Shown: positions 1,777 to 29,850, counted from the first letter of the stretch. The stretch: DNA of 64,000 nt from Styela clava (GCF_964204865.1 NC_135256.1:22196001-22260000), one strand, 5' to 3'. Program-made: numbers and translations. The notes: generated by a model not told the origin, from the letters alone.

Positions 1777-3796
1777 TTTATGGACACCCGAATATATATG
1801 TATCACACATAATCCATATACGCAATGATCTTATTTTAAATTCAATTAGATGTAAAGACTTTGGCTTGAAGTTGATCAAGCTGGATCAACCCAAAACGTA
1901 AAAAAACAGAATTTTTGCAAGTGTATATATATAGGCACCCATCGCATAAATTTGATGATTTTCCAGATAAATCTCTGAATTCAATAACCCCCAGTGATGT
2001 TTGTTTGTGACTTCAATATTGATGTGATGAGATATCAAATTGATTATAAAATGTAACCAAATATGTCGGTAGTATCTATTCTTTTGTTTTTATGTGGTAT
2101 GAATAAACCCACACAGGTTACTTATTCAACAGCTACTTTGGTTAGATTTGACCTCGAACGCCTCGCACTTTTTCCCATTTATATTTCCATATTATATCCC
2201 AGGCGAATTATGTTCTCTCTTTATTATATTAATTTCCTGTTGACAGTGACTCATTATTGCGCCATAGTGAAGACTTAGGGAGCGAAACTTTTCCCGGGGT
2301 TTTGAGATGACTCTCATCTGATTCTTTGTTTTATACATACGGCACTGTGGAACTGCGAAAGTGTCGTTTAATACTGAGATTTGCCTTGGATATAGTTTAC
2401 ATTAGGTGTGTGGGCTTCGTGAAATCTGTCATATTAAGTAATAAGTTAGCTTAGTTAGGTCCTATTTAGTATTGGCTATTATAGCTTGTTATTGTGAATG
2501 TTATTTCATCATTCTTCCATTGCCTATTTATATATTTATAATAGTGCATCCGTGTCAATATAAATTAGTTTTATCGTCTGTCTTCAAGTTTCTGTGCTGT
2601 AGCAACATTTTACTCATATGTGGAGATTGTTGATGAATACAGTTCGTTTTCTGAGGATCTCGTTGCCTCTTTACTACTTTGGTTGGGCAGTTACTAGGAC
2701 CTGAGAGATCGCGCATAATTCTTCAAGGCGGGTGCAAATAGGACTCCACTACAACAACGTTGAGTGGATTGGAATTCACGTTCCAACTTTATTAGATCAT
2801 TTTTATTTCAATAACTTAGATTTTTAGTTAGAATATAAAACAAATAATAGTGTTATCAAATAGGACATTTCAGACCCTTTTCCCCTCCTAGAGTCTTGGC
2901 TCATCTTCACCTCAAATGCAAGATATCCCAAATCAGAACACAGAGAGTGATTATAGTATTTTTAATTCTGACAATTTTAGAGATCACTTAAGCTTTGTAG
3001 TTGATAAAGATGACACAATATCCAGCGATATAAACTAAAAATTCAACACAGGTATAAATGCAATCAAATCTTTGGTTGACCAGCATATTCCCTCTATAAC
3101 TAATTCAAATAATAGTATACTGAAGCTAACGTCATGGAATTTCAAGGATCTTTACAAATCGATTAAAACCGAAGATAAAATGTACAGTAAATGTTGCCAA
3201 AGCAGATTTCAATTAATTAAGAGAATGCAAAAAGTATCGGAACAAATATCTTGGACTCTTACAAAAGATTATTACAAAACCGTCTTTCCTAGGTACCAAG
3301 AAGATATTATTTCTAAAATTCGAATTCGTGTTACCAAAGCAAACTACAGTCTCATCTTATAGTAAATACCAATAAATTAATGACAGCAATGCAACCTGTA
3401 GCCTCTCAACCAACATTTCTTGAAAGTCGGTTCTAAACATACTTCACAAAAAGTTCAGCTGCAACAGTCCACATTTAAAGTCTTGGGCAAACACCAAATG
3501 GTCTAATACCATTCCCCTGGAAATATAACAACAAATTGATAAATGTATGCGAAAAAGGTTGTAGGTAGCGATAATATACCTAGGAAAAAAGTTTCAAAAT
3601 TGCCAAACTTGTTTTGTCATCTATTTTGTCTAAAATGTTTTACCAAAGTTTCTATGAAAGTGTGTACCGCTGGATTTTTAAAATAGCAAACGTGGTGCCA
3701 TTGCATAAGCAGGGGTCTAATTAGTATACGCTTATTTCTCTACTGTCAGGTGTTCAAGTCTGTCCCAGTTTGGTGTTAGAAATAATCATTCTACTG

Positions 3797-4088
3797 AACA
3801 AGAGAGCATATGGACACGAAGACCAAAACGATTTGCAGTCAAAAAACTTCCGATTTTAGCGAAAGAGGTCAAAAAATCGCTATAAATAATTTATATAAAG
3901 ATCCAAGAGAACATAATTCAAAGTGAAAAATTAATTTTGCAGATCGCACAGAAACCTCTGGAATAAACAAAAATAATATCTTTTTAGCGAATAGTTAATA
4001 AGATAATTGTCATAGAGCAAAATACGGAAGAAAATACCCAGAACAACAACACAATAACAAAACGATCCTAGGTCGATTTCGTGTCCAA
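3797..4088 (+). mobile_element. DINE-1/Helentron-like non-autonomous element, family A (duplicate at 12599-12913)
   Basis: 5' aacaagagagc..ggacacgaa and 3' aacgatcc..ttcgtgtccaa (subterminal inverted repeat). Related copies at 34684-34963, 37573-39386(-), 50434-51063 and 28210-28360(-). Confidence 0.55.
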
Positions 4089-4591
4089 CTAGCAATGCCT
4101 AGGATTAGGGAAATTTTTTCGGATCTTGCTAAAGCAATCGACACATTTCAATCCTACTTGATGAATTTTTGACAGCCACTGATATCTTGAAAAATCTCTC
4201 TACAGACTTACTTTGCTGCTGAAGTTATCCAAGGCATACAAGCGCGCATGGTTCATTTGGTGAGAGGATTATTGTTAACAAGCCAGCAAAAAAGTCAGTT
4301 TTCAGTAAATCGTTTCAAGAATAGAGTAAAATGGTGTTGGAAAAGGCGCAAGAATTGATGTCTGATTGCAAATGCCGCAAAATACAATAAAAGAATGTTG
4401 ATTGGGGGGAGGGGGGGGGATTGGGGGGGGGGGGCATGTATCCTCAGGAACCCCTCTGCCCTCAAATTAGTTCAGAAGGACAATATTAACAACAAGACAA
4501 TCAAGAACAACAACGTAATAACAAAACACCGTGTCCAATAAGTCATTCGTTCTTTAGTTCAGGGCTTTTGCAATAAAATCTAATTGAGATG

Positions 4592-4713
4592 TATGTATGT
4601 ATGTATGTTTATTTGTCTCGTAAAAGCAATATAAAAGAGTAAGTAATTGTAAATACTGAAGACACAAGACCATATTGGCCTAAAACACAGATGTGCGGCA
4701 TACACCCCTCTCT
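4592..4713 (-). mobile_element. Short insertion with a (CATA)n tail, probably a 5'-truncated retroposon 3' end
   Basis: Present only in unit 1; the empty site in unit 2 reads ttagatgatctgg. Flanked by gatg/gatg; the reverse strand ends aaataaa-catacatacatac. Confidence 0.55.
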
Positions 4714-6146
4714 GATGATCTGGTGAATGAGCGTTTTTGGTGATGAAGTTTTTCAACATTAATGAACATTAGTTTTCTAGATCAGAAACAGTTCAAATGA
4801 CAATTTCTATACGCTGGAATGTGCCTGTAAGCACTTTACAATGGCTAATTGTTGAACTTCTGTTTGCATATTATGTTATTTTATTCTCTTCATGTGCAGG
4901 CTAAAAGAAATCTTAGTAAAATGCGATTTTTTTTTGTTACACATCGTTATGACTTGACAAGATGCATATTGCCCTACACGTCGATTTCCTTGTTGGGGAA
5001 ATACTCTTAAAATAAGTATTGAAAACTTCTTAATAGTGAAAAAAGGGAAAGTGTTTCAGAGATCTCAGAATCGAGGAAACATTCATTGCTTGCGCACATT
5101 TAATTAATTAAAGAGTAAATAAACGCAGTAGTTTCAACTACCAATTACTTTTGAATGACATGGGTTCAATTGCTCATGTATTATTATATATCACTAATTA
5201 ACGATGTTAATCAGGTTTTCTGTTTCATTGGGTTGGGTTTTAAACCAGCGGGTTTATTAAATATATATTTATTGGCAATTTAGTAACTTGTCCCGTAGAA
5301 TATGTCGAAATACACTCAATCGATTGCTCGGTAAAAATTATCGAGTGGTGGGTAAGTAGGACTGATGATTCAATAGTGCGCCATAATTATAGTTATTTAT
5401 TTTTCGGCATAACTAATATTTTTTGTACATTGATCAACTCAATAATCGCCAGTTTGCTAATATTAGAGTAAAGGTAAACTTGTTATTTATCCTAAATGGA
5501 ATCGGTAATAGTCTAAATGATCAGCTAAAAGACTAATAAGTACGGCAAATCTTCCTATTATTACTGATAAACAATAATTATATATTAAAATATACATTTC
5601 TATATTGGTTTGCAAATTAGCATTTATATATGCATCAAATCAATCTTGTTAGTTTATCGATTATCACTTAACTACATTGTTGAAAAATATATAAACTTAA
5701 CTTTCGTTTCAAAATACCAAATACAGTAAAACTTAGTTGTCTTGATGTTTTGCTTGAAGTATTCAACAATAAGTAAGATTACTGATCTTTTTTGCAGTTT
5801 TTCATCAACGTCTACATAAGCATCTACGAAATGCCGTCCGAACAAAATTTTACGATACTCGCAGCGGCGTGCTATTTATTTATTTTATTGTCGAAAGTGA
5901 CGAATAAATTAATTTGACAAGATGCCGCTCATATGGTATGATGTCTCAAGTTTTTTTGAACTTGAGTTTACCATTGTGATAATTAAATAAGCATTCAGAA
6001 TAGTTGTTCATACTGGAATAGGTTGATTTACGATACGATACTCCAAGTTTGTTCACTGCTATTATCCAAACTAAAGTTATTGCATTTTACAGTGAATGGG
6101 CACGTTTAATCCATTTTGTTAACCCCTATATATTGTGGATATTAGA

Positions 6147-9100
6147 ATGGAAAACAGCTCGATGTCATTTATTAATTATTCATCAACTGTTGAAATAACA
6201 ACGTTGGAAAGGTATAGTAGTTATATATTTTACATATACTTATTTCCTTATTATGATACTGACATGAAATTGCTCCATTAGCACAAGACAAACGTCCACT
6301 GTGATTTATTGCCTTGCAAATCAATTTGGATATTGATGATCCTGTTTATTTAGATGTGTCGTTTGAAAAATCCTCTAAATTTCAAAATTTATTCGTCCCG
6401 TTACTTTATAATTTCAAAGACAGCCTTTATTTTTCAGAGATGTATGGAAAATGGGTATTTTCTCTTGGTCAGATGCAGTTATTTGTTCTGTATTCGTTGG
6501 CATCATGACGGTATTTGGACTAGTGGCAAATCTGACGACAATCGTAGTGATTGTAAAAACACCGAAGTTGAAATCGTGAGAAGAAGAATTATACTCTTTA
6601 AAATAGTTTTCGCAACCTATTCATTTAGGTGTGGGGTGAAGTTTGGCGGCTTATGATAGTTTATTAGAAGTAGTCGGTGAATCGCATTATCGATCATGAC
6701 GAGATTCTATGTGCAATATAACTTTCATTACCATGAGGACTTGAATTTGACACTGAACTCGACTACTTCATTTGTCTATCAGCATCTATTTCAAAGTTCA
6801 AACTTACCCTCTTCCCAAAATAAATTAGATATTTTTGTATGCTAGCTTTTGTTTTTCTTAACAAAAACCAACACAGTTAAGAAGACCTCATAGGTACGCC
6901 CAGTGATTTCCCTACACCCCCCCCCCCCCCCCCTATAGGGGGTGAACACCCCCCCTAAAATTTCAAACACCCTCCCTAATTTTGAGGTGCGATTCCACAC
7001 TGAGGGGTTCTAAGCCGCAGTCTGCGGGCCAATTACGGCCCGCGTGACGATTTAAAATAGCCCGCCGAACTTGAGTGAAATAGTTTAATCCTTCATGTGG
7101 TACCTTTTGAGTTTTGGATACCGTCTATTGTTACATCATTATCACAGTTTAAGCACGTTTATTCGTAACAATTGAATTATTCCGGTATCTTATGTATACG
7201 TATGGGTATTAGGATAACACACTGCGGTATTTTAGATATCAGCCGTATATTAAGAAAGCTTGAAGATGTCACAAAACGAAAACTAGGCACTGAAAACAGA
7301 CGTTTTTTAGAAGAATGACAGCGTTTTTATTTCTTTATTGAAAAGAATCAAACTTCAGCGATTTGTCTTCTTACCAACAAAATATTTCAGTTCTGAAGGA
7401 ATACAACATTATGCGACATTATGATCAGTTGACGAGTGTATTTCAAAATTTAATTCATACAAAAGTCAACAAACCTGTTCAAAAAAATTAGAAATGTGTA
7501 ACAAAACAAGCCATAAGTAGCCATTCATACAATGCCAGATGAGCAAGTAACTTAATTCATTAGTCACCATCAGTTGCAAATTAATTGTTGAAACGTAGTA
7601 GTATATATTTACGGTTTAAAGCCGTGCTCGTTATCTATTCCCCGGGAATTCTATCAGCTAAATATTATAATTATTGATTTCATTACATAACAAACTGCGA
7701 TGCTAGGTGTATCTAAAATCAAGCTTAGAGCCTATTTTGGTGCCTATTTCTCAAAATTTTCTCAGAGCGCTTAAGCGCGCCCTGAACCCCAGCCGTGTCG
7801 TCCCGCACTTTTACTCGCTCCCCTTTTTTGGCCCTACAATTTCGTTCTGCTGTGGATTTTGGCTTGCCGTCATTCAACTTGGGGGGCCCCATGTACATCG
7901 TTTCTTAAATACATACCATTTTTTTAAGAATACAAATAGCCTAGTTTTATCTCTAATAGCAAATTATTTACCACCCCCTAAATTTTGAAACACCCCCCCT
8001 AAAAAGAAAAGCTGGGGAACATACTGGGTACGCCCTCGAGGGCCAATATCATTCTCCCCTACAGTCAAGATCTAGACTCTAGGTCTATTATAGATGATGA
8101 ACTGGATATCAGTTTACTGGAATAGGCATTCTTGTTCAGATTTACAATTTCAAATAATCAACCAAAATCTCGCTTCATATTATGTTTACTCCAGATTGCC
8201 ATTCAACGCATTAATAGCCAGCTTGTGCGTCTCTGACATCATCGCATCCTGCAACAGTCCTCTCATGCTTTATTGGAAGACATTTGGATACTACAGATAC
8301 CAGTTGCCAGAATTCTTTTGCAAGGTCTCAATTTAAATTTAATAAAATTTCTCTGGTGCGCGGATCTTTGAAACAGACATAGGTCAAAATTTATCTAAAT
8401 TTTACTTCAAAAAGTACTCCTGAAATGAATAGTTTTTGTGATGTTTTGTATTGATAATTGTTACAAGCCTCGGTCATTCTACCGAAAGGGTCGCAACCCG
8501 TGAAATATTACTCCTATAGGACTATTTTCATAGATATCACGTTTATCTTTGAAGTACCTGTTTTTTTACAATCGAGAATCAATTAATACAATATATCCAT
8601 ATGCGCTAAAATTATCATGGTAATTATGATATGACAATCATTTCAAGTCAATCGGGCATATTGTATAGTACTACTTTCGTTGATTTTTTGCGATCTGGAC
8701 CTAAAGTCACGCGAATTGTGTTATGAGCGAAGTTGTTTTTAGGTTACTTTACCGATAAACAGTTGGACCAATACTTCTACAATTCAACATATTCTGGCCT
8801 TCATGCTGATTCGACTCGGTGCTATCAGTTATCCCCATCGTTTAAAAGATTTCACCCTTCGAAGGGCAAAGGTTAGCTTTCTATAGTTTTGTTGTGTTTT
8901 TATTTTTTATTTTAGTAAATGAGTTAATGAAAGGCTAATAAATAATCTAATAAAAAACTTCCTACTTCAGATTCTGATCACTGTAATATGGATTGTAACC
9001 TTTATCGGAAATAGTTGCTTCCCGATGTGGTTCTTAGGAGTACATGACACGGAAGCAGGGAGTTTCACGCGTTCAGCGTGCGTTACTGATAAGTCTGTGT

Positions 9101-10819
9101 AAGTTACAATTTCCAATACAAATTATCAGTGTAATGTTTAAAAACTACTTTTTGTTGAAATGAGTTTTCGAGAAGTGTATGGATATTAGTTATCAAGTTA
9201 CTAGCTCATCTAATGTGTAAATTATTTTTTGAAGATGGTTCATCGTAAGAAAAGTTTCATACGTGAGACAGATTATCTTCTTGTACATTCCAATGGTTCT
9301 CATCGTCACATCTACGCTTCTTCTCATTAGACTGTTGATAATTCGTCGAAACAAGAAACAACAAGGTAAGAAGAAGCGTAAAAATGGATACTGGGTAATA
9401 TAACAGAGTTGCAACAAAATCATTTTCATATATTTCAGAAAAAAATGATAATTCTGACGTCAGCAAAGAGAATGCTGCATTGATTCAACTATCGTTAATC
9501 GTAACTTCGTTCTTAATTGGATATTTACCGGATTTTGGTATATATTTTTATTCACCATTTATTATTTTTACTCACTGTTCTTCCCCGTGTTGTAACTATA
9601 GGATGGCTTCCAAAAGTAAAAGTTGCCTTTGTTGATATTTGCTATAGAAACAATTTAACAATGTATATGAGATATCATAGGAAAATCAAATATATATTGC
9701 AATCAAATGAACTATCAAATTGCAATTACTAATCAAATACAAGTAAACACAGAAATTCTATTTTGACGTAAATGAGAATTTATTTTTGTCGCCAACAATT
9801 AGGCACATTCAAGATACATTGGTGATCAAAATAAATTGGAGATCAAAATTAAACTGTCACATGTACGCACACCATAGGATCTCAGGTTCAATTATAAAAA
9901 GGCTGAAGACACATATCGAATTGTCCTGAGACATTCGATGTACAAATCGGACCCAAGATTGCGTGTAATCGATGGTATGGTTTCGTGGCTATGCTATCAA
10001 CTCGGTGGTGTGGCGAATTCCTCTCCCTCGCCACAGCACCGCTAATTACCCTGCGTGGGTTTGCAGGTTCGAATATCGTGGGGGATAATCATGTGCGAGA
10101 GGATTGCTGGACTACTTGCCGCCGTATAGTGGTTCACGTCATCGATAGTCGATTACGGCTTCCTCCACCATCAAGTCCATGCATCTGAAAACAAAATAAC
10201 TGTCTAACTGATCCCATACCCGACATGGACTTGTAACTGGACGAGAGGCCGTGGTTCGCCATATGATTAAGTCGTTCTCACGACTATCCTCTCCCCCGGG
10301 ATATAAATGTAAATCCTATCCTTTTACCTATAGTTGTGGCTACTCTTTGGTGGTATCAGATGCGTTACTTTGACTAGCTTGTGTATAATGACAAAGTAGC
10401 ATATCATTTATACATTTCCGCCAGATTGTGTATCTTGCAATGTCTATGACAGCTGATCTACTTTTGCAGGATTCAGAATTTCGGTAATGATCAAATCACT
10501 GGGTATTAAATTTGGCGGAAGAAGTGCTTGGTTACTCAGTATGTTATCTCATCTTGTTCAGAGATCCACAGAATGTCTGAATCCTATATTTTACAACCTA
10601 GGATCTAGGTTAGTTTTTTTCTAGTATATATCACTTATTATTTATTCCATAAAGCATGATGTAATAACTGATTTCTAATATCCCTTGTTTACAATTATAT
10701 TCAGTCAGCTGAGAGAAGCTACCAAACAATTTCTCGGCTTCGAGGAGGTAGTGTACGCTTCTTCGACTAAATCGAGTGAAATGCAAATGAAGAACCAACA
10801 TACCAATGTAAGTGTATAA
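6147..10819 (+). CDS. Rhodopsin-family (class A) orphan GPCR, copy 1, 357 aa; exons 6147-6211, 6438-6575, 8195-8324, 8743-8871, 8971-9098, 9235-9365, 9439-9537, 10470-10608, 10705-10819
   Basis: All introns GT-AG with consistent phases. TM1 GLVAN, TM2 LCVSD, ECL1/TM3 Cys (FCK), TM3 R3.50 (IRL), TM4 W, TM5 FLYIP, TM6 FLIGYLP, TM7 NPIFY; N-terminal N-glycosylation sequons. Confidence 0.9.
6901..8026. mobile_element. Non-autonomous hAT element in GPCR copy 1 intron 2, carrying a Buster/Charlie-type transposase fragment
   Basis: Perfect 8-bp TSD ggtacgcc (6893-6900, 8027-8034); imperfect TIRs cagtgatttccc / gggaacatactg; absent from unit 2. ~7270-7425 reads KRKLGTENRRFLEE*QRFYFFIE...ICLL...SVLKEYNIMRHYD (degenerate BED finger). 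Confidence 0.85.
9970..10322 (+). mobile_element. tRNA-derived SINE (window family) in GPCR copy 1 intron 7; deleted remnant at 17586-17664 in copy 2
   Basis: Aligns by eye with 62344-62703: B-box-like ggttcgaat, core aagtccatgc..gaaaacaaa..gacgagaggccgtggttcgccatatg, tail gtaaatcctatcc. Confidence 0.85.
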
Positions 10820-10914
10820 TCAGATGGAAACAGAAATTTCATGTTGGACAGAGGAAAGACTGAAACTGAGTTGTACACATGTAATTTTGCATTATTATAT
10901 TATACTTATCAGAA

Positions 10915-11173
10915 ACATTGTATATTGTTATATATATTTAATATTTGGTTATTAAGTTTTATTTTTATTTGCATAAATTATGTATTGCTATGATTTGAAT
11001 TGAGATATTGAAGAATGGTAAATTTACAGTTGGTAAGACATTGTATATTGTTATATTTGACTTTTGGTTGAAGTTTTATTGCTATTTGATATTTATTACA
11101 ACACTGCATAAATTATGTATCGTTATGATATAAATTGAGATATTGAAGATTAGTGAAGATTTACAGTTGGTAA
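10915..11173 (+). repeat. Two-copy ~125-bp direct repeat in the GPCR 3' UTR region (also ~18277-18540)
   Basis: acattgtatattgttata...gagatattgaaga...tttacagttggtaa occurs twice in tandem in both duplication units. Confidence 0.8.
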
Positions 11174-14100
11174 CCAGAATCATTTAAAGAAATATTTTTA
11201 TATGAAAGCTTCCATGAATTGATGAGAGTTGCGACTTTCATGAAAAAGTGTTCGGCATGTTTCAGTAATGTATAATCTTGTATTCGTAGTTGTCGATTGG
11301 TTATTGGGCTAACCTCGTCGGTTGTTATTATATATGCGATTGTTTTATCGTATTTTCTGCGTAGTTCAGGGATGGCTGTGTGCAGGATATAGCTGGATTA
11401 TTCGTTATCACTGAGTAGTTCGCGCAACGATTAACTGATGGCAGTTATCTCATCTGGATAACCGGATAACATCATTATCTCTATTCTATCTGGTGGTCTG
11501 TTAAATTAGCACAGTACGTCAAAGGCACAATGACATAACATGCAGTGTGTATATGCTACCTTGGTAATGCCAAATGATGGAAGTTATATTGCATTTTCGT
11601 CATAACATTAGCTGCCTCAGTTACAAAATTTTCAACTGATACAATATATGAACGCAAGGCACGGACTTCGTTACAGTCCAACCACGATTAAATAATACGT
11701 GTCTCTCAGTGATTATGGAAGATTACGGAAGGGAGCCCAGAGAGAAAATTATAGCTTCATTTAAGCAACTTTCATGTTCATCTAATAATATTACAAAGTG
11801 ATTGGTCTATAGTGCGTATCGATTAGCATTGGAAGCATTATCAAATTGTCAATAAAATTAAAAGATATATAATTTTAAATTCCAATTCTTTTTATAATAT
11901 TGTTGCATACTTAATGTAGGAAATTGCCTGACTGATACAGAATTAGTTTTGCATCTTATAACGCCCATAAAAAGGGACGAATGAAGTAAAAATGCAACTC
12001 CTCAAAAAGTTAATTACCCTGCCACAGAAAAATCTGTAACGGATTTGATCAAAATAAACAGAATTTCTGTGGTTGTTGTTTAATTAATGGTTTCTTATAG
12101 AACTGAAAAAACATTCCTGCGAGCATTCATTCCTAATGCCACCATATTGTTTTCGGGGCGTGTATTGCTCTCATTTTCGTACCAACCGCTTGGAAATCAC
12201 GGTTCATGGCATATTACTGGTTCCATGCGGTTTTGAATTCAATAATTAGGAAACAAAGAAATAAATATTTATTTTATTTTATATATATGATGCATAGCCT
12301 TGTTTGCCCTTACTGTAGTGAAAATAGGTTTAAAAAATAATTTTAATTACAAATCCGGGTGTCACTATGAAAGTGTGTACCGCTGGATTTTTAAAATAGC
12401 AAACGTGGTGCCACTGCATAAGCAGGGGTCTAAATATGATCCAAATTAGTATAGGCTTATTTCTCTACTGTCACAAGACAAGTTGCCAAAATGTATGAGA
12501 ATAATTTATATATATATATAATCCAATCTCTTTTTTTGAAAAAAAAAACAGGTGTTCAAGTCAGTCCCAGTTTGGTGTTAGAAATAATCATTCTACTGAA
12601 CAAGAGAGCGGTGCTCAAATATATGGACACAAAGACTAAAACGATTTGCAGTATCCGGTATCGTCAAAAAACTTCCGATTTTAGCGAAAGAGGTCAAAAA
12701 TAGCTATAAATAATTTATATAAAGATCCAAGAGAACATAATTCAAAGTGAAAAATTAATTTTGCAGATCGCACAGAAACCTCTGGAATAAGCAAAAATAA
12801 TATCTTTTTAGCGAATAGTTGATAAGATAATTGTCATACAGTAGAATACGGAAGAAAGTACCTAGAACAACAACACAATAACAAAACGATCCATAGGTCG
12901 ATTTCGTGTCCAACTAGCAATGCCTAGGCTCATGGAAATTTTTTCGGACTTTGCTAAAGCAATCGACACATTTCAATCTTACTTGATAAATTTTTGACAG
13001 CCACTGATATCTTGAAAAATTTCTCCACAGACTTACTTTGCTGCCGAAGTTATCCAAGGTATACAAGCGCGCATGGTTCATTTGGTGAGAGAATTATTGT
13101 TAACAAGCCAGCAAAAAAGTCAGTTTTCAGTAAATCGTTTCAAGAATAGAGTAAAATGGTGTTGGAAAAGGCACAAGAATTGGTGTGTCATTGCAAATGC
13201 CGGAAAATTGCAATAAAAGAATGTTGGAATTTTTTTTTTCTGGGGAGTTTGGGGGGCATGTATCCTCAGGAACCCCTCTGCTCCCAAATTAATTCAGAAG
13301 GACAATATTAACAACAAGACAAACAAGAACAACAACGTAATAACAAAACATCGTGTCCAATAAGTCGTTCGTTCTTTAGTTCAGGGCTTTTGCAATAAAA
13401 TCTAATTTAGATGATCTGGTGAATGAGCGTTTTTGGTGATGAAGTTTTTCAACATCAATGAACATTAGTTTTCTAGATCATAAACAGTTCAAATGACACT
13501 TTCTATACGCTGAAATGTGCCTGTAAGCACTTTACAATAGCTAATTGTTGAACTTCTGTTTGCATATTATGTTATTCTCTTCATGTGCATAACAGCTAAA
13601 AAGAAATCTTAGTAAAATGCGATTTTTTTGTTATGACTTGACAAGATGCATATTGCCTTATACGTCGATTTCCTTGTTGGGGAAATACTTTTAAAATAAG
13701 TATTGAAAACTTATTAATAGTGAAAAAAGGGAAAGTGTTTTTGAGATCTCAAGATCGAGGAAACATTCATTGCTTGTGCACATTTAATTAATTAAAGAGT
13801 AAATAAACGCAGTAGTTTCAACTACCAATTACTTTTGAATGACATGGGTTCAATTGCTCATGTATTATTATATATCACTAATTAACAATGTTAAACAGGT
13901 TTTCTGTTTCATTGGGTTGGGTTTTAAACCAGCGGGTTTATTAAATATATATTTATTGGCAATTTAGTAACTTGTCCCATAGAATATGTCAAAATACACT
14001 CAATCGATTGCTCGGTAAAACTAATCGAGGGTGGGTAAGTACTGATAATTCCATAGTGCGCCATAATTATAGTTATTTATTTTTCGGCATTACTAACATT

Positions 14101-14822
14101 TTTTGTACATTAATCAACTCATTAATCGCCAGTTTGCTAATGTAAGAGTAAAAGTAAACTTGTTATTTATCCTATATGGAATCGGTAATAGTCTAAATGA
14201 TCAGCTATAAGACTAAATAAGTACGACAAATCTTCCTATTATTACTGATGAACCAATAATTATATATTGAAAATATTCATTTCTATATTGGTTTGCAAAT
14301 TAGCATTTATATATGCATCAAATCAATCTTGTTAGTTTATCGATTATCACTTAACTACATTGTTGAAAAATATATAAACTTAAATTTCGTTTCAAAATAC
14401 CAAATACAGTCAATCTTGAATTGTCTTGATGTTGCTTGAGGTATTCAACAATAAGTGAGATTACTGATCTTTTTTGCAGTTTTTCATCAACGTCTACATA
14501 AGCGAAATGCCGTCCGAACAAAATTTTACGATACTCGCAGCGGCGTGCTATTTATTTATTTTATTGTCGAAAGTGACGAATAAATTAATTTGACAAGGTG
14601 CCATTCATATGGTACGATGTCTCAAGTTTTATTAAACTTAAGTTTACCATTGTGACAATTAAATAAGCATTCAGAATATTTGTCCATACTGGAATAGGTT
14701 GATTTACGATACGATACTCCAAGTCTATTCACTGCTATTAAACAAACTAAAGTTATTGCATTTTACAGTGAATGGGCACGTTTAATCCATTTTGTCAACC
14801 CCTATATATTGTGGATATTAGA

Positions 14823-17800
14823 ATGGAAAACAGCTCGATGTCATTAATTAATTATTCATCAACTGTTGAAACAACAACGTTGGAAAGGTATAGTAGTTAT
14901 ATATTTTACATATACTTATTTCCTTATATAGTACTGACATGAAATTACTCCATTAGCACAAGACAAACGTCCTCTGTGATTTATTGACTTGCAAATCAAT
15001 TTGGATATTGATGATCATGTTTATTTAGATGTGTCGTTTGAAAAATCCTCTAAATTTCAAAATTTATTCGTCCCGTTACTTTATAATTTCAAAGACAGCC
15101 TTTATTTTTCAGAGATGTATGGAAAATGGGTAACTTCTCTTGGTCAGATGCAGTTATTTGTTCTGTATTCGTGGGAATCATGACGGTATTTGGAATAGTG
15201 TCAAATCTGACGACAATCGCAGTGATTGTGAAAACATCGAAGTTGAAATCGTAAGAAAAGAATTATATGCTTTAAAATAGTTTTCGCAACCTATTCAGTT
15301 AGGTGCTGGGTGAGGTGACCGTACATTTGAACCCATGTACATTTGAACCCATGCGTATATCCACGGGTTCAATCTATATGCGGGTGCTAAAACCCATGGG
15401 TTAGGGTTAGTATGGGTTTAACTATCCGTGAAACAAAAAAAATTCCATAGGTGCAATAGCATACAGGTGCAATTGTCATGGGTTCAAATGTACGTGGGTT
15501 CAAATGTAATGGAACCGCTGGGTGAAGTTTGGCGGCTTATGATAGTTTATTAGAAGTAGCCGGTGAATCGCATATTCGATCAAGACGAGGTACTATGTGC
15601 AATATATCTTCATTATCTTGCATTACCATAAACATGTTTACTGAATGGACTCGAATTTGACACTGAACTCGACTACTTCATTTGCCTATCAGCATCAATT
15701 TCAAAGTTCAAACTACCCCTCTTTCTGACTTAAATATTTTTGTATGCTAGCTTTTTTTTTAGCAAAAACCAACACAGAATAATAATGATGATCTGGATAT
15801 CAATTTACTGGAATAGGCATTCTTGTTTAGATTTACAATTTCAATTTTCACCTAAAATCTCGCTTTATATTATATTTTATGTTTACTCCAGATTGCCATT
15901 CAACGCATTAATAGCCAGCTTGTGCGTCTCTGACATCATCGCATCCTGCAACAGTCCTCTCATGCTTTATTGGAAGACATTTGGATATTACAGATACCAG
16001 TTGCCAGAATTCTTTTGCAAGGTCTTAGTTTAAATTTAATAAAATTTCTCTGGTGCGTGGATCTTTGAGTCATACATATATATGTCAAAATTTATCTAAA
16101 TTGTACTTAAAAAAGTACTCCTGAAATGAATAGTTTTTGTGATGTTTTGTATTGATAAGTGTTACAAGCCTCGGTCATCCCACCGATCTGGTCGCATCCC
16201 GTGTAATATTACTCCTATAAGACTCCTATAAGACTCCTATATTTTCTTAGATATCGCGTTTATCTTCGAAGTACCTGTTTTTTACAATCGAGGATCAATC
16301 AATACAATATATCCATATGCGCTAAAATTATCATGGTAATTATGATATGACAATCATTTCAAGTCAATCGGGCATATTGTATAATACTACTTTCGTTAAT
16401 TTTTTGCGATCTGGACCTAAAGTCACACGTATTGTGTTATGAGCGAAGTTGTTTTTAGGTTACTTTACCAATAAACAGTTGGACAAATACTTCTACAATT
16501 CAACATATTCTGGCCTTCATGCTAATTCGACTCGGTGCCATCAGTTATCCCCATCGTTTAAAAGAATTCACCCTTCGAAGAGCAAAGGTTTGTTTCTATA
16601 GTTTTGTTGTGTTATTGTATTTCAGTATATGGGTTAATAAATAATCTGATAAAAAACTTTTTACTTCAGATTCTGATTACTGTAATATGGATTGTAACTT
16701 TTATCGGAAATAGTTGCTTCCCGATGTGGTTCTTAAGAGTACATGGCGCAGACGAGAAGAGTTTCACTGGTACAGCGTGCGCTACTGATAAGGCTAAGTA
16801 AGTTACAATTTCCAATATAAATTTCCAGAGTGATTTTTCAAAACTTCATTTTATTGAAATAAGTTTTCGGGAAGTGTATGAATATTAAATATCAAGATAC
16901 TATGGTTTATCTAATGTGTCCATTATTTTTTGAAGATGGCCAATCGTAAGAAAAGTTTCCTACGTGAGACAGACTTTTTTCTTGTATATTCCAATGATTC
17001 TCATCGTCACATCTACGCTCCTTCTCATTAGACTGTTGATAATTCGTCGAAACAAGAAACAACAAGGTAAAAAAGGCGTAGAAACAGATACCAGGTAGTA
17101 CAACAGAGTCCCAACAATTTTTTTTTTCATATATTTCAGAAAAAAATGACAATTCCGACGTCAACAAAGAAAATGCTGCATTGATTCAACTGTCGTTCAT
17201 CGTAGCTTCGTTCTTAATTGGATATTTACCGGATTTTGGTATATATTTTTTATTCGCCATTCATTGTTTTTAGTCACTGATCTTGCCCGTGTTGTAACTA
17301 TATGATTGCTTTCCAAAGTGAAATTTCTTTTATTGATATTCGACATAGAAACAATTTAACAATATAAATAATGAGCTATCATATGAAAATCAAATATTGC
17401 AACCAAATGAACTATCAAATTGCAATTACTAATTAAATACAAATAAACACATAAATTCGATTTTGACATTAATAAGAATCTATTTTCATCGCCAGCAATA
17501 AGGCACATTGAAGATACATTGCTGATCGAAATAAACTGGGTATCAAAATTAAATTGTCACATGTACGTTTAAGAAAGGATCTACCGGGATGGACTGGTAA
17601 TAGGACGAGAGGCCACCGAGGCTTTTCTCTCCCCCGGGATAAATATGTGAATCCTATCCTATCTTTTTACCTATAGTTGTGGCTACTCTTTGGTGGTATC
17701 AGATACGTTGGTATTCATTTGTGTTTTAACTGTGACTAGCTTGTGTATAGTGACAAAGCAGTATATCATTCATACATTTCCGCCAGCTTGTATGTATCTT

Positions 17801-18184
17801 GCAATGTGTTATGACAGCTGATCTACTTTTGCAGGATTCAGAATTACGTTAATGATCACAAATAGCATGGGTATTGAATTCCGAGGAAGAGGTCCTTGGT
17901 TATTCAGTATGTTATCTCATCTTGTTCAGAGAGTCACAGAATGTCTGAATCCAATATTTTACAATCTAGGATCTAGGTAAGTTTATTTTTTAGTATCACT
18001 CATTTTTTATTCAATAAAGCAAGATGTGATAACTGCTTTCTAATATTCTTTGTTCCCAATTATATTCAGTCATCTGAGAGAAGCTACCAAACAATTTCTC
18101 GGCTTCGGGGAGGAAGTGAACGCTTCATCGATTAAATTGAGTGAAATGCAGAAAAATAACCAACATACCAATGTAAGTGTATAA
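14823..18184 (+). CDS. Class A orphan GPCR, copy 2, 358 aa (375 aa if the in-frame ATG at 14772 is used); exons 14823-14887, 15113-15250, 15892-16021, 16459-16587, 16670-16797, 16936-17066, 17140-17238, 17835-17976, 18070-18184
   Basis: Same exon sizes, phases and TM motifs as copy 1; no frameshift or premature stop seen. Confidence 0.9.
15314..15516. mobile_element. Mutator-like MITE in GPCR copy 2 intron 2
   Basis: Perfect 9-bp TSD gctgggtga (15305-15313, 15517-15525); ~40-bp TIRs built of tacatttgaaccca repeats; empty site in unit 1 near 6630. Confidence 0.9.
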
Positions 18185-21157
18185 TCAGATGGAAACAGAA
18201 ATTTCATGTTGGACAGAGGGAAGACTGAAACTGAATTGCACAAATGTAATTTTTCATTATTATATACTTATCAGAAACATTATATATTGTTATATTTGAT
18301 ATTTGATTTTTAAGTTTTATTTTTATTTGCCTAAATTATGTATTGCTATGATTTGAATTGAGATATTGAAGACTGGTAAAGATTTACAGTTGGTAAGACA
18401 TTGTATATTGTTATATTTGACTTTTGGTTAAAGTTTTATTGCTATTTGATATTTATAATTTATTACAACACTGCATAAATTATGTATCGTTATGATATAA
18501 ATTGAGATATTGAAGATTAGTGAAGATTTACAGTTGGTAACCAGAATTATTTAAAGAAATATTTTTATATGAAAGCTTCCATGAATTGATGAGAGTTGCG
18601 ACTTTCATGAAAAAGTGTTCGGCATGTTTAAGTAATGTATATATAATCTTGTATTCGTAATTGTTGACTAGTTATTGGGCTAACTTTACCGGTTTTTATT
18701 ATATATGCGATTGTTTTATCGTATTTTCTGCGTAGTTCAGGGATGGCTGTGTGCAGGATATAGCTGGATTATTCATTATCACTGAGTAGTTCGCGCAACG
18801 ATTAACTGGTGGCAGTTATCTCATCTGGATAACCGGATAACATCATTATTTCTATTCTTATCTGGTGGTCTGTTAAATTAGCATGATACGTCAAAGGCAC
18901 AATGACATAACATGCAGTGTGTATATGCTACCTTGGTAATGCCAAATGATGGAAGTTATATTGCATTTTCGTCATAACATTACCTGCCTCAGTTACAAAA
19001 TTTTCAACTGATACAAGAGCACAATAAAAAAATATATAAACGCAAGGCACGGACTTCGTTACAATCCAACCGCGATTAAATACATGTCTCTCGGTGATTA
19101 TGGGAGATTACGGAAGAGAGCCCAGAGTGAAAATTATAGCTTCATTTAGGCAACTTTCATGTCCATCTAATGATATTACAAAGTGATTAGTCTATAGTGC
19201 GTATCGATTAGCATTGGAAGCATTATCAATTTGTCAATAATATTGAAAGAGATATAATTTTAAATTCCAATTCCTTTTATAATATTGTTGCATATCTAAT
19301 GTAGGAAATTGCCTGACTGATACAGAATTAGTTTTGCATCTTATAACGCCCATAAAAAGGGACGAATGAAGTAAAAATGCAACTCCTCAAAAAGTTAATT
19401 ACCCTGCCACAGAAAAATCTGTAACGGATTTGATCAAAATAAACAGAATTTCTGTGGTTGTTTAATTAATGGTTTCTTATAGAACTGAAAAAACATTCCT
19501 GCGAGCATTCATTCCTAATGCCACCATATTGTTTTCGGGGCGTGTATTGCTCTCATTTTCGTACCAACCGCTTGAAAATCACGCTTCGTGGCATATTACT
19601 GGTTCCATGCGGTTTTGAATTCAATAATTAGGAAACAAAGAAATAAATATTTATTTTATTTTATATATATGATGCATAGCCTTGTTTGACCTTACTGTAA
19701 TGAAAACATGTTTAAAAAATAATTTTAATTGCAAATCCGTGTATAAATATTATAAGATTAAATTGTTTAAATTAAATTTCCAATAAAAATGAAGTTAGAT
19801 TTACCTAGTTTTCTTAAATATATTATGTTTATAATATTTCTATGTAACGGAAACAAAAACTCGCGTTAGCGCTCCAGTTTCTGGAAATATTCAATGATCA
19901 TACAGCCTGAGGCGACTGACACGGATACTTATCCGATAATCTGCATCCGCAAAGGGGATAATTATCATCAGAGCAGATAATTTTTGGCGACGAAAAAAGT
20001 TATTTCTAGACTTTCTATGTCTTTATTGCTTGAAATTAGACAATATATCGTGACTTATATGAGTTATTGAAATTTAATTACAAATGTTCGTGCAAAAGTA
20101 CATATTCGCTTTCTAATGACACACTTAATTTCTGGAAAGTCAAAATCTTGAGAAAATGAGACGTATTTGTTCAGCTCGGCGCACCAAGTATGTATAGAAA
20201 AATACCTTAAAAACAAGTACTCTATATAGAAATTAATGTGAAGTATAGCTGAGAGTATTCCCGAATTGAATAATATAATTCACGTTGATGTAATTCTAAT
20301 CAAAAATGTTTAGAACTAATTATTTTATATGAAAAATTTCAAAAAGTTCACAAAGTTGAGGCAACCATCATGTTATGAAAATTACTAATTTATTTTTCAT
20401 TTTTAATCAAAAATCTTTCGTACTAGGATACTAAAGCTCATGACGCTTCCTATAGTTGAAGATTATACCAAATGTACGTAAAATCGAATCGGGCAAAAGT
20501 TGTTATTTTCTTCAAAACTGTTTACTGATGATTTTCATTATTCTCAAGCTTCCTAAGGTTTTAACATGATATAGCGCGGGAGAGCGTTAAAATTTGAAAG
20601 TGATTACACTTTTCCTGAAACCAAAAAACCATAATTGGCAACTTTTAGATATGTAATTTAACCAATTTAAAGTGAATTATATAACTGACAATTAATCGGT
20701 CATTTCCATAAAATTAGGTTGTGTTAAAATGATATCAAATGTAAGAACCTTTTTTTGTATCTTTTAGCGAAATTATACTATCTCGTTTCATTAGTTTCAC
20801 AAACAGTTTTACTTTTCTGCGGGGAAAAATAGAAACGTAGCATCAAGGAACTTTACAAATTATTATAAAGAAGAAATGGAATTAGCTTTTGTTGATCTGG
20901 CAGGTTAATTCAATATTATAGCCATAGATTGAAAAAGAGAAGAATATATTTCCTGAATGACACTCGTGTAGATATCTAGTTAAAATACACCAGAACTGTC
21001 GCAGGCCATTAAAATTACATTTTTCAAGTCTCAAAATATTTGTAAAAAAACCTATTTATTAAAACTTTTGAATTGTGTATTGTAGGTTCCTCCATATATC
21101 AGAAAAACTTTAAATTCATTATCTTTAATCGCGAATGCTGTTTGTGATTATTCTATA

Positions 21158-27100: not shown

Positions 27101-27975
27101 TTGGGCTCTGTACAAACTTGAAAGATAAATTCTTCTGTAAAAAGGCTGATAAATATTAACCTGTTCAATTAACTGAAGACATGGCAGGCTCATCAATTTC
27201 GAGATCTATCTGCAGATGGATATGTGAATGTGCAGCATGGTAACAACGTGACTAATAATAATAAATATATATACATAATATATATGCTTTTGCAGGTTAC
27301 AGGCTAACTATGGTAATAACGAGTCTACTTGGAATTAAATTTTATGGAAGAGGACCATGGTTATTTAGTATCACGTCTCATGTCTTCGTTAGAATATCGG
27401 AATGCTTGAATCCTATATTCTACAATCTCGGATCCAGGTATGAAAATTACACTATTTTCCTATAGAATTATGTATATACCAGCAGGAAACAACTTAGTTC
27501 TGTGTTTAGTGCCTAACCCTACAAAGGCATTGTAGATTAGTCATTTGGGTTTGGAGTCGTATTCGTGAGCATAATACAAACTCACAGTTCAAATGCCTGT
27601 TCAATTACGCAAGTATAGAATGACGTGGTAATCTGTGATAAGCCTAAAACAGCAGCCATTTCAAATCAAGTAAACATAGTAACGTTTAGCCTCAAATAGA
27701 GGGACGCTTTGAAATAGTCTGCTTCGAGGGTGACAAGGAGCAGCAAACCCCAGACCAACTGTAGGCTATATATATATATATATAACTGGAAATTCATACA
27801 GAACATTTTTTTTATTATTAATAACAGTCAGATGAGGAAGGCTACGAAAGATCTTCTTGGAATAGAAGATAATAAGCGTTCAACATCTACTCCGATAGAA
27901 ACGAAATCGAAGAAGAAAGAGAATATCGAAACATCTATCCCAATATCATCAAGTAAAGATAAAACTCGCCTATAG
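21158..27975 (+). CDS. Class A orphan GPCR, copy 3 (older paralogue), 399 aa; exons 21158-21312, 22073-22210, 22744-22873, 22983-23111, 24962-25089, 25528-25658, 26425-26523, 27296-27437, 27828-27975
   Basis: Internal exon sizes (138,130,129,128,131,99,142) are identical to copy 2. Motifs GLVAN, LCVSD, FCK, IRL, FYLP, FLIGYLP, ECLNPIFY; Ser/Thr-rich N-terminus with NxS/T sequons. Confidence 0.9.
23263..24352. mobile_element. Foldback-type long inverted-repeat element in GPCR copy 3 intron 4
   Basis: Arms ~23263-23711 and ~23830-24352 are reverse complements (ctatggtggcccatcgttgtcacg / cgtgacaacgatgggccaccatag; A-rich vs T-rich tracts); candidate 4-bp TSD atgt. Confidence 0.85.
24506..24836 (-). 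mobile_element. tRNA-derived SINE (window family)
   Basis: Near full-length reverse complement of 62344-62703. Confidence 0.9.
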
Positions 27976-29237: not shown

Positions 29238-29850
29238 GCGGCGCCCCATTTAGAAGCCACTGTACAAGCGTGAGGATCACACTCGTCATCGAATCTCTGA
29301 TTACCCCACATGGGCTAGCAGGTTCGAATCCCGCGAGGGGGTTTCTGGAATCCTAGCCGCCTTAGGGTGGTTCATGTAGCCGCTGGTCGGTGACGGCTTC
29401 CTCCAACATCAAGTCCATGTATCTGAAACCGATAACTGACTAATAACCGTGTTTCCCCGAAAATAAGACCTAGCCAACAGCGCAAATTTTTTTTTGATCT
29501 AGTGACCTAGTCGATAGCAAGAGATCTCTTATACACGTTTTAAATGATTAATCTAAAACGTGTGAGAGAGGAAAACGTTTTTATAAGTAAATGGATATCG
29601 GTTTTCGTATTTTTTATAATTTATTTGAAAATCTCGTAATTCTCTACTTCGTATTTTTGTTTTTGGAGAATAAAAATAAAAGACATCCCTAAAAACAGGC
29701 CCTGGTGTCATTTTTCGAATAAAAATTGAAGTAATACCCAGTTTTATTCTCTGGGAAACACAGTAATCACATACCCACTCGGACGAGAGGCCGTAGTTCC
29801 CTCAATGATTTAATCGCCATATCGACTTGATAGGCCCCTGGGATAGGTAT
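29238..29850 (+). mobile_element. tRNA-derived SINE interrupted by a Tc1/mariner-pogo MITE
   Basis: SINE head and core at 29238-29446; the SINE resumes at 29764 (cataccc..gacgagaggccg). Confidence 0.8.
29447..29763. mobile_element. Tc1/mariner-pogo MITE
   Basis: TIR ccgtgtttccccgaaaataagac with degenerate right end ttattctctgggaaacacag followed by TA; same TIR as 35859-35951. Confidence 0.8.

What the first reader, a model, noticed from the sequence alone, without database searches (positions are those of the whole stretch)
8971..17976. Extracellular-loop hypervariability between two young GPCR paralogues: candidate diversifying chemosensory or recognition receptor family
Exon 3 (TM2) has 0 amino-acid changes and 1 synonymous change; exon 4 (TM3/ICL2) has 1 conservative change and 5 synonymous changes. 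In contrast, ECL2 reads GVHDTEAGSFTRSACVTDKSV vs RVHGADEKSFTGTACATDKAK (11 of 21 residues differ, disulfide Cys kept), and TM6-ECL3-TM7 reads ISVMIK-SLGIKFGGRSAWLL vs ITLMITNSMGIEFRGRGPWLF. Both frames are intact. This is the pattern of positive selection on ligand-contacting surfaces, as in chemoreceptors or self/non-self receptors. It would be equally notable as a balanced polymorphism if the copies are alleles. This is the best candidate for an undescribed system in the window.
Basis: partly seen in the sequence, partly recalled or inferred. Interest (0 to 1): 0.8.

Follow-up and report, generated by a model that had tools for sequence, protein, structure and literature searches.

The report
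Two sea-squirt receptor twins, loops diverged
Two neighbouring, already-annotated receptor genes of the sea squirt Styela clava are recent copies that differ mainly in two outward-facing loops; the pattern is real, but it fits ordinary divergence after duplication about as well as adaptive selection.

Summary
The window holds a tandem duplication (3652-12368 and 12365-19750). It carries two intact, spliced, transcribed 9-exon class-A GPCR genes. My models are identical to RefSeq XP_039251280.2 (copy A, 357 aa) and XP_039251279.2 (copy B) of Styela clava. A third paralogue, C, lies at 21158-27975.

Of 44 amino-acid differences, 18 plus one codon indel fall in ECL2 and ECL3, which make up 38 of 357 residues. 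Family site rates predict 7.8 (17 of the 18 were scorable; P=0.0004).

Positive selection is not shown.
- Loop dN/dS is 1.04 against local synonymous sites.
- It is about 2 against neighbouring introns (P=0.004). A neutral simulation gives P=0.03-0.05.
- The cytoplasmic tail also diverges (7 of 25 residues).
- Non-coding divergence is mosaic: flanks 3.6%, introns 3-7 14.2%. The near-identical TM2 exon therefore partly reflects homogenisation.

No conversion donor exists in the genome. Both copies are expressed at about 1:1.

The family has at least 49 loci in tandem arrays, and the only named members come from ascidians. Its nearest solved relatives are peptide receptors (ghrelin, motilin, neurotensin), not known chemoreceptors. 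ECL2 is conserved between paralogues C and D.

The scan had already noted this subfamily on another piece of the genome (s1-823072).

Verdict: an ordinary young GPCR pair, with suggestive but unproven adaptive change in the loops.

The parts
3652..12368 (+). Tandem duplication unit A
   Evidence: Self-BLAST shows it colinear with 12365-19750 at 88-94% identity. Mismatch profile.
12365..19750 (+). Tandem duplication unit B
   Evidence: DNA contigs of run X4 give each copy a depth of 200-217, the A/B-identical stretch 547, and the single-copy flank 246-274.
6147..10819 (+). Copy A gene, 9 coding exons: 6147-6211, 6438-6575, 8195-8324, 8743-8871, 8971-9098, 9235-9365, 9439-9537, 10470-10608, 10705-10819. 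Product 357 aa.
   Evidence: All introns are GT-AG and the ORF is intact. The product is identical to XP_039251280.2. Pfam 7tm_1 scores 82 bits on that protein.
14772..18184 (+). Copy B gene, 9 coding exons: 14823 (RefSeq start 14772)-14887, 15113-15250, 15892-16021, 16459-16587, 16670-16797, 16936-17066, 17140-17238, 17835-17976, 18070-18184. Product 358 aa, or 375 aa from the upstream ATG.
   Evidence: With the start at 14772 the product is identical to XP_039251279.2. RNA contigs show the TM1-TM2, TM6-TM7 and TM7-tail exon junctions.
9031..9244 (+). ECL2 coding part of A (9031-9098 and 9235-9244, with an intron between); residues 175-200
   Evidence: 12 of 26 residues differ from B, and Cys191 is kept. 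The AlphaFold model shows a beta-hairpin at 176-180/189-193.
16730..16945 (+). ECL2 coding part of B (16730-16797 and 16936-16945)
   Evidence: The only genomic match to this block is copy A, at 82%.
10493..10528 (+). ECL3 coding part of A, residues 282-293
   Evidence: 6 of 12 residues differ and A lacks one codon. Outgroup C shows that A has the deletion.
17858..17896 (+). ECL3 coding part of B
   Evidence: An RNA contig matches B here with 0 differences over 141 nt.
8782..10819 (+). High-divergence block of unit A (partner about 16498-18184 in B), covering exons and introns alike
   Evidence: Windows show 9-17% mismatch. Introns 3-7 give 135/948 = 14.2% against 89/2461 = 3.6% in the flanks, P=6e-26.
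21158..27975 (+). Copy C, third paralogue with the same exon phases: 21158-21312, 22073-22210, 22744-22873, 22983-23111, 24962-25089, 25528-25658, 26425-26523, 27296-27437, 27828-27975. Product 399 aa.
   Evidence: Found by tblastn and modelled. The product is identical to XP_039251132.2. About 48% identical to A.

Best explanation
Copies A and B are two functional, co-expressed tandem duplicates in Styela clava. They belong to an expanded clade of class-A GPCRs whose named members all come from ascidians. The nearest solved relatives of that clade are peptide receptors (ghrelin, motilin, neurotensin, somatostatin, opioid).

Shown:
- Since duplication, the seven-helix core and the intracellular loops have stayed under purifying selection.
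- The ECL2 beta-hairpin, ECL3 and the middle of the cytoplasmic tail have changed at roughly the neutral rate, or slightly above it.
- The duplicated unit is a mosaic. The flanks and the TM2 exon region diverge by a few percent, whereas the 3' two-thirds of the gene diverges by 13-21%.

Inferred:
- The loops form the rim of the ligand entrance, so the two receptors probably differ in ligand preference or binding kinetics while keeping the same activation core and the same C-terminal S/T-x-V tail motif.
- The low-divergence parts have been homogenised between the copies by gene conversion or unequal crossing-over. The loops sit in the part that was not.
- Adaptive change in the loops is possible but not required.
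For: - Gene models are identical to RefSeq proteins.
- Pfam 7tm_1 gives E=6.5e-23 on copy A's public protein.
- The AlphaFold2 model has pLDDT 86.9, seven helices and an ECL2 hairpin.
- The family profile is best matched by GHSR at 3.8e-43, then the motilin receptor, NTSR1 and SSTR2. Foldseek gives the same group.
- omega is 0.20 in the TM helices, 1.04 in ECL2+3 and 0.67 in the tail.
- The loop excess over family site rates has P=0.0004.
- Against introns of the same block, neutral expectation is 12.2-12.7 loop replacements and 18 are observed (P=0.03-0.05).
- Mosaic divergence: P=6e-26.
- In another individual, the A allele carries the B state at two diagnostic residues near the block edges (T17, K348).
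- Derived changes occur on both lineages: 28 in A and 20 in B.
- Both copies are seen in RNA at about 1:1 at diagnostic letters of the TM6 exon.
Against: - Loop nucleotides are more diverged than the neighbouring introns (30 vs 18.5 expected, P about 0.004). Replacements at loop nonsynonymous sites exceed the intron rate about twofold (P=0.004). Pure neutrality does not predict either result.
- In the ECL2/TM5 exons, copy A took 11 derived changes and B took 2 (P=0.02). This looks like a burst on one lineage.
- Gene conversion is inferred from the mosaic pattern only. No tract was dated or polarised.
Confidence: 0.55

Rival explanations
1. ECL2 and ECL3 are under recurrent positive or diversifying selection because the family acts as a chemosensory or recognition-receptor repertoire, and A and B are one snapshot of that arms-race-like turnover.
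For: - Replacements are concentrated in ECL2/3 beyond family site rates.
- Loop pN is 0.265 against 0.142 in introns (P=0.004).
- Charge and N-glycosylation-site changes occur in the outward-facing parts.
- The family is large (at least 49 exon-2 loci) and lies in tandem arrays.
- Ascidians lack vertebrate-type olfactory receptors (PMC2396169).
Against: - omega is 1.04 on local synonymous sites, and the neutral simulation is only borderline.
- The intracellular tail diverges as well.
- ECL1 and the N-terminus are conserved.
- ECL2 is conserved between paralogues C and D, with 12 of 17 pre-Cys residues identical.
- The very young pairs D1/D2/D3 and F1/F2 show no loop bias, though they carry few differences.
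- Alleles from two assemblies barely differ in the loops.
- The nearest relatives are peptide receptors.
Confidence: 0.25
2. The divergent gene-body block is older than the duplication. Either it is an ancient, possibly balanced, haplotype pair that unequal crossing-over captured as two tandem copies, or one copy received the block from a paralogue or allele that is no longer in this genome.
For: - Neutral divergence peaks over the loop-bearing exons (introns 3-7 at 14.2%) and falls to 3.6% in the flanks on both sides. That is the shape expected around an old selected polymorphism.
- Synonymous divergence in the loops is also high (0.26).
Against: - No donor is found anywhere in the 377 Mb assembly.
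- Both copies, with the same loops, are present in two assemblies and in RNA of further individuals.
- Derived changes are shared out between both copies rather than one copy matching an outgroup.
- Homogenisation of the flanks explains the same mosaic more simply.
Confidence: 0.12
3. Assembly artefact: A and B are the two alleles of one gene, wrongly laid side by side.
For: Ascidian genomes are highly heterozygous, and false duplications are a known fault of long-read assemblies (general knowledge). The flank divergence of 3.6% is in the allelic range.
Against: - The window has no gaps.
- Copy-specific transposon insertions are present.
- In DNA run X4 each copy has about the same contig depth (200-217) as the single-copy flank (246-274), and the A/B-identical stretch has twice that (547).
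- Both genes are separate RefSeq loci in the older assembly as well.
- Both types appear in each of two RNA samples.
Confidence: 0.03

Closest known systems
Urochordate-specific class-A receptor clades for Ciona-specific neuropeptides (Ci-LF-Rs, Ci-YFV-Rs, Ci-NTLP-2-R; PMC6475428), and the 'Other/Unclassified Rhodopsins' of Ciona (PMC2396169)
   Same: These are rhodopsin-class receptors restricted to tunicates, multiplied within lineages and lacking vertebrate orthologues. NCBI auto-names for members of the present family are inconsistent in the same way. The present family also has a Ciona member (XP_078481676.1) and a Clavelina member.
   Different: I could not compare sequences with the deorphanised Ciona receptors because the paper's supplement is not held. 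Membership of any of those clades is therefore untested. No ligand is known here.
Ghrelin / motilin / neurotensin / neuromedin-U receptor group of peptide GPCRs
   Same: These are the best profile matches (GHSR E=3.8e-43) and the best fold matches. They share the ECL2 beta-hairpin and the Cys3.25-ECL2 disulfide pair. A basic residue sits at 6.55 (Arg276 in A). In GHSR and NTSR1 a basic residue there contacts the peptide (my own knowledge).
   Different: - Identity is only 15-23%.
- DRY is replaced by IRL.
- Trp6.48 is replaced by Tyr.
- The family has its own charged core (D6.51, H7.39, R7.43, E7.46), and A and B have Asn at 3.32.
- There is no orthology. The family has only 132 cluster representatives among 1.84 billion proteins.
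Young mammalian GPCR paralogue families with replacement excess in extracellular parts (MRGPRX, formyl-peptide receptors, TAAR and V1R chemoreceptors)
   Same: Tandem duplicates with conserved helices and divergent extracellular loops. PMC11910321 (abstract seen) treats MRGPRX1 and MRGPRX2 as paralogues that recognise unrelated peptides.
   Different: In those families Ka/Ks above 1 was shown with many sequences (my own knowledge, not checked here). Here omega in the loops is about 1 on local synonymous sites, from a single pair.

Membership tests
Class A (rhodopsin-family) GPCR, Pfam PF00001 | Score above the Pfam gathering threshold for 7tm_1 | tested here: met
   Copy A's public protein (P0004, identical to my model) scores 82 bits against a cut-off of 30.5, over residues 53-315. 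Exon by exon the signal is weak: E=0.06 for A's TM2 exon, and 9 of 13 family members match in that exon.
Class A (rhodopsin-family) GPCR, Pfam PF00001 | Seven transmembrane helices plus helix 8 | tested here: met
   AlphaFold2 model with pLDDT 86.9 and pTM 0.84. Helices at 32-62, 70-96, 107-140, 150-175, 195-241, 245-282, 291-318 and 320-330. TM-scores (normalised by target length) of 0.78-0.86 to most top-ranked solved peptide GPCRs.
Class A (rhodopsin-family) GPCR, Pfam PF00001 | Landmark residues N1.50, D2.50, W4.50, P5.50, P6.50, NPxxY and the Cys3.25-ECL2 Cys pair | tested here: met
   N53, D82, W161, P216, P271, NPIFY 311-315, C110 and C191 are present in A and B. They are invariant or nearly so in 42 family proteins.
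Class A (rhodopsin-family) GPCR, Pfam PF00001 | E/DRY at 3.49-3.51 and CWxP in TM6 | tested here: not met
   IRL replaces DRY, keeping only Arg3.50. GYLP replaces CWxP, with Tyr at 6.48. These motifs are common in class A but not obligatory, so class membership stands.
Ghrelin/motilin/neurotensin receptor subfamily (orthology) | Consistent closest relationship to that subfamily | tested here: inconclusive
   GHSR is the top profile and fold match, but at 23% identity or less. NTSR1, SSTR2 and opioid receptors follow closely. No tree with outgroups was built.
Chemosensory GPCR repertoire | Large, tandemly arrayed, lineage-specific family | tested here: met
   At least 49 TM2-exon loci on at least 10 contigs, many in arrays.
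Chemosensory GPCR repertoire | dN/dS above 1 at ligand-facing sites across the family | tested here: inconclusive
   For A vs B, loop omega is 1.04 on local synonymous sites and about 2 against introns. Other young pairs are too similar to test. ECL2 is conserved between C and D.
Chemosensory GPCR repertoire | Expression in sensory cells | not testable with these tools
   RNA runs X5 and X6 show transcription, but their tissue is not given.
Polymorphic self/non-self recognition receptor | High allelic polymorphism in the recognition surface | tested here: not met
   Between two assemblies, B differs at 1 residue (TM6) and A at 4 residues, one of them in ECL2. This compares only two haplotypes per gene.

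The most novel reading that the evidence does not exclude
The ECL2 and ECL3 changes are adaptive. Copy A in particular went through a burst of selected replacements (11 derived changes against 2 in the ECL2/TM5 exons) that retuned it to a new peptide or environmental cue. Gene conversion keeps the rest of the two genes alike, and selection protects the loop-bearing block from being homogenised. The wider family has at least 49 loci, lies in tandem arrays, has its own charged core, and is named so far only from ascidians. On this reading it would be a main chemosensory or lineage-specific peptide-receptor repertoire of ascidians, which lack vertebrate-type odorant receptors.
Probability: 0.15. 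Interest if true: 0.6.

Novelty: new member of a known kind. Interest (0 to 1): 0.3.

Why it matters
Ascidians are the closest invertebrate relatives of vertebrates. They have no recognised odorant receptors, and most of their lineage-specific rhodopsin-class receptors are orphans.

A transcribed pair that keeps an identical activation core but differs in half of the ECL2 and ECL3 residues is a convenient natural experiment. It could show which loop residues set ligand choice in this clade. The mosaic of homogenised and diverged segments is a compact case of concerted evolution stopping at a functional module.

As it stands, the finding describes an ordinary kind of post-duplication divergence in genes that RefSeq already lists. 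It does not reveal a new system.

Tried and rejected
- **Pfam exon by exon.** Only E=0.06 on one exon, too weak alone. Exon-level family profiles and then public full-length proteins replaced it.
- **tblastx for the start exon.** Found nothing. A phase-aware scan for ATG...GT candidates, compared across paralogues, found it, and RefSeq confirmed it.
- **Fetching 200 kb of paralogue clusters.** I used the 3 kb loci already held plus five small gap fills.
- **Other young pairs as replicates.** D1/D2/D3 and F1/F2 have too few differences. E1 is a pseudogene with stops and D3 has a disrupted TM7 exon.
- **Hi-C raw reads (X10) for a depth test.** Only about 6% of the run was read and depth was near zero. 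Contig depths of X4 were used instead, which is weaker evidence.
- **Conversion from paralogue C or others.** Rejected. No match to either ECL2 block exists beyond the partner copy, and there is no one-sided similarity to outgroups.
- **Haplotig artefact.** Rejected.
- **Motif look-up in the Ciona deorphanisation paper.** The supplement is not held.
- **Family variability by raw pairwise difference.** Saturated, so maximum-likelihood site rates replaced it.
Full report
**What is there.** A self-comparison of the window shows a tandem segmental duplication. Unit A is 3652-12368 and unit B is 12365-19750. They are colinear and 88-94% identical, with copy-specific insertions. The window has no N.

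Each unit carries one gene on the + strand. I first built 8-exon models from conserved open frames and GT-AG junctions. The paralogues then showed that the codon I had taken as the start is Arg elsewhere, and that it follows a conserved phase-2 acceptor. A phase-aware scan found a short upstream start exon, MENSS..., rich in N-x-S/T sequons. It lies at 6147-6211 in A and 14823-14887 in B, and has counterparts in other paralogues.

**How the spliced models were handled.** Searches used single exons or exon-level family alignments.

Inside scripts the exons were concatenated only to check frames, count codons, estimate site rates and test identity with public proteins. No joined sequence was printed.

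The exon-2 family profile, searched against 1.84 billion representatives, returned public full-length proteins. One of them, XP_039251280.2 of Styela clava, is identical to my copy A model. XP_039251279.2 is identical to copy B when B starts at the upstream ATG at 14772. XP_039251132.2 is identical to the third paralogue C at 21158-27975.

All later whole-protein work (Pfam, PDB profile, structure) used those public proteins by their ids.

**Check of the observation.**
- The TM2 exon has 1 synonymous change and no replacement.
- The TM3/ICL2 exon has 5 synonymous changes and one D>E.
- ECL2 differs at 11 of the 21 quoted residues and keeps the Cys.
- ECL3 differs as quoted and has one codon indel.

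Over the whole CDS there are 44 replacements and one indel, with dS 0.146, dN 0.064 and omega 0.44.

I assigned topology from class-A landmark residues, and the AlphaFold2 model later confirmed it. Replacements by region:

| Region | Residues differing |
|---|---|
| ECL2 | 12 of 26 |
| ECL3 | 6 of 12, plus the indel |
| C-tail | 7 of 25 |
| ECL1 | 0 of 8 |
| N-terminus | 3 of 32 |
| TM2, TM3, TM4 | 0 |

Site rates were estimated on 12 other paralogues. They predict 7.8 differences in ECL2+ECL3 among the 41 scorable differences, and 17 are observed (P=0.0004). The clustering is real.

**Is it positive selection?** By Nei-Gojobori counting, ECL2+ECL3 have pN 0.265 and pS 0.256, so omega is 1.04. 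The helices have omega 0.20 and the tail 0.67. The loops look unconstrained rather than clearly adaptive when measured against their own synonymous sites.

Other neutral yardsticks show an excess.
- Loop nonsynonymous sites change about twice as often as introns 3-7 (23/88 vs 135/948, P=0.004).
- A simulation using the substitution spectrum of those introns expects 12.2-12.7 replacements in the 38 loop codons, against 18 observed (P=0.03-0.05).
- The same simulation expects 18.5 nucleotide differences, against 30 observed (P about 0.004).

These are nominal values for one pair. They are suggestive, not decisive.

Polarising with paralogues C and D1 puts derived changes on both lineages: 28 in A and 20 in B. 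Copy A took 11 against 2 in the two exons that encode ECL2 and TM5 (P=0.02).

**Mosaic divergence.** Non-coding divergence is far from uniform:

| Segment | Divergence |
|---|---|
| 5' flank | 3.7% |
| 3' flank | 3.5% |
| Intron between the TM2 and TM3 exons | 6.5% |
| The five introns from the TM3 exon to the last exon | 13-21% (pooled 14.2%) |

The flanks differ from those introns with P=6e-26.

The loops lie inside a block, about 8782-10819 in A, in which everything is 3-4 times more diverged than the flanks. The near-identity of the TM2 exon therefore reflects more than purifying selection. Its synonymous divergence is also only 0.04.

The simplest reading is an older duplication whose flanks and 5' part were later homogenised by gene conversion or unequal crossing-over. 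In support, the A allele of the older assembly (XP_039251280.1) differs from the window's A at four residues. Two of them carry the B state (T17 and K348) and lie near the edges of the block.

Conversion from another paralogue is not supported. Neither the 1.45 kb gene core, nor the 91-nt ECL2 blocks, nor the ECL2 exon peptide match anything in the 377 Mb genome except the partner copy.

**Are the copies real and expressed?** Runs X5 and X6 behave as RNA. Their depth is confined to the exons and about 600 nt of 3' UTR. They show a GT..AG joint for the last intron, and loose ends that read into the next exon at the TM1-TM2 and TM6-TM7 junctions.

At four diagnostic letters of the TM6 exon, A-type depth against B-type depth is 88.8 vs 80 in X5 and 118.9 vs 135 in X6. 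An exon-7 contig matches B exactly, and an exon-9 plus UTR contig is A-type. Both genes are therefore transcribed at similar levels.

In DNA run X4, contig depths are 200 for A-only pieces, 217 for B-only pieces and 547 for a stretch where A and B are identical. The single-copy flank has 246-274. This fits two real loci rather than two alleles. It is an inference from contig depths. The raw Hi-C run was too thinly sampled to use.

Both genes are also separate RefSeq loci in the earlier assembly.

**What family?** Exon searches of the genome find at least 49 loci with the TM2 exon and 27 with the TM7 exon. Many lie in tandem arrays on contigs C3, C5, C10, C14, C16 and C17. The 16 paralogue loci I modelled (C, D1-D3, E1-E3, F1-F2, H-O) show the same exon pattern where the exons could be placed, and in the complete models the boundaries keep the same phases.

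Shared features:
- SLCVSD in TM2
- FFCK at the start of TM3
- WT..VTIQHIL.F...RL in TM3
- KEN.AL.QL...SFL.GYLPD in TM6
- R.SECLNPIFYN in TM7
- a C-terminal S/T-x-V

Only 132 cluster representatives among 1.84 billion proteins match the TM2-exon profile. All 16 that I looked up and that carry a name come from ascidians: Styela clava, Ciona intestinalis and Clavelina lepadiformis. Their automatic names are inconsistent: ghrelin-, galanin-, PAF-, GPR183-, histamine H2-, dopamine-, somatostatin- and FFAR3-like.

A profile of 42 public members is best matched by the ghrelin receptor (E=3.8e-43). The motilin, neurotensin, somatostatin and opioid receptors follow. The AlphaFold2 model of copy A (pLDDT 86.9) has an ECL2 beta-hairpin and superposes best on the same peptide receptors.

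An earlier first-stage note of this scan (s1-823072) described, on another piece of the genome, an orphan subfamily with D3.32, D6.51, H7.39, R7.43, E7.46 and DRY replaced by LRL/LRI. A and B have D272 (6.51), H301 (7.39), R305 (7.43), E308 (7.46) and IRL, so they belong to that subfamily. At 3.32 they have Asn, where most members have Asp.

Background from papers: Ciona has no vertebrate-type odorant receptors, and it has many unclassifiable rhodopsin-class receptors (PMC2396169). Several urochordate-specific class-A clades proved to be receptors for lineage-specific neuropeptides (PMC6475428).

**Family-wide loop behaviour.** ECL2 and ECL3 are the fastest regions family-wide, with relative rates of 1.65 and 1.99. 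The tail (1.48), ICL3 (1.47) and the N-terminus (1.40) follow. This is the usual class-A profile.

ECL2 is not hypervariable everywhere. Paralogue C on this contig and the D genes on contig C3 share 12 of the 17 residues before the ECL2 Cys (YPS..LSPTGKSC), which is more than their overall identity.

The very young pairs D1/D2/D3 and F1/F2 differ at a handful of scattered residues and cannot test the idea.

The most likely account is ordinary divergence of two functional, peptide-receptor-like orphan GPCRs after tandem duplication. The ligand-entrance loops are free to change, or mildly selected to change. The remainder of the unit has been partly homogenised.

Recurrent diversifying selection of the chemoreceptor kind remains possible (about one in four), but a single pair cannot show it. 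The genes are already annotated, and the kind of pattern is well known in GPCR families. I therefore rate this as a new member of a known kind with modest interest.

Noticed in passing
window 21158-27975: A third paralogue, C, with the same nine-exon plan. It equals XP_039251132.2, which RefSeq names 'alpha-1A adrenergic receptor-like'. It is about 48% identical to A. Its ECL2 resembles that of the D genes on another contig more than that of A or B.
   Followed up: yes
window 9439-9537 (TM6 exon of A): RefSeq lists an isoform X2 of copy A (XP_039251281.2, 324 aa) that skips exactly this 99-nt exon. That isoform would lack TM6 and could not form a seven-helix receptor.
   Followed up: partly
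window 6096-6146 vs 14772-14822: An in-frame ATG lies 17 codons upstream of MENSS. It is open in B, and RefSeq starts B there. In A it is closed by a stop (TAA in A, CAA in B). Other paralogues start at ME(N/F).S, so B's extension may be an upstream ORF or an annotation choice.
   Followed up: partly
window 15892-16021 (TM2 exon), RNA runs X5 and X6: The only RNA contig over this exon differs from B at 7 of 130 bases. The changes include M>V at 15962 and two Y>H changes in ECL1 (15986, 15989). Reference A and B differ from each other here by a single base, and the proteins from both assemblies carry the reference letters. This could be polymorphism shared by both copies, or a further copy in those animals.
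   Followed up: no
window 15314-15517 and 17620-17663; also 6877-8093 and 9868-10288: Copy-specific repeat insertions. The two in B attract thousands-fold depth in every run, so they are high-copy elements. The 9868-10288 element in A has relatives at 24515-24798, 29333-29443, 62415-62696 and 62962-63127.
   Followed up: partly
L008/L034, L007/L035, L026/L036 (contig C3, 16.54-16.56 Mb); L013/L033 (contig C16): Three nearly identical tandem family members (D1-D3) repeat with a 7.3 kb period, and D3 has a disrupted TM7 exon. Member E1 has stop codons in its TM1 exon and a TM2 exon for which no in-frame splice boundaries could be placed, so it is a likely pseudogene.
   Followed up: partly
last codons of A (10799-10816), B (18164-18181) and most paralogues: The family ends in S/T-x-V (NVSV, ASSV, QTTV, QSAV, TSSV). 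This resembles a class I PDZ-binding tail. It is conserved in A and B even though the middle of the tail differs.
   Followed up: no
window 8758-8760 / 16474-16476 (residue 117, position 3.32): A and B have Asn at 3.32, where most family members have Asp. This change in the presumed binding pocket is shared by both copies and predates their split.
   Followed up: partly
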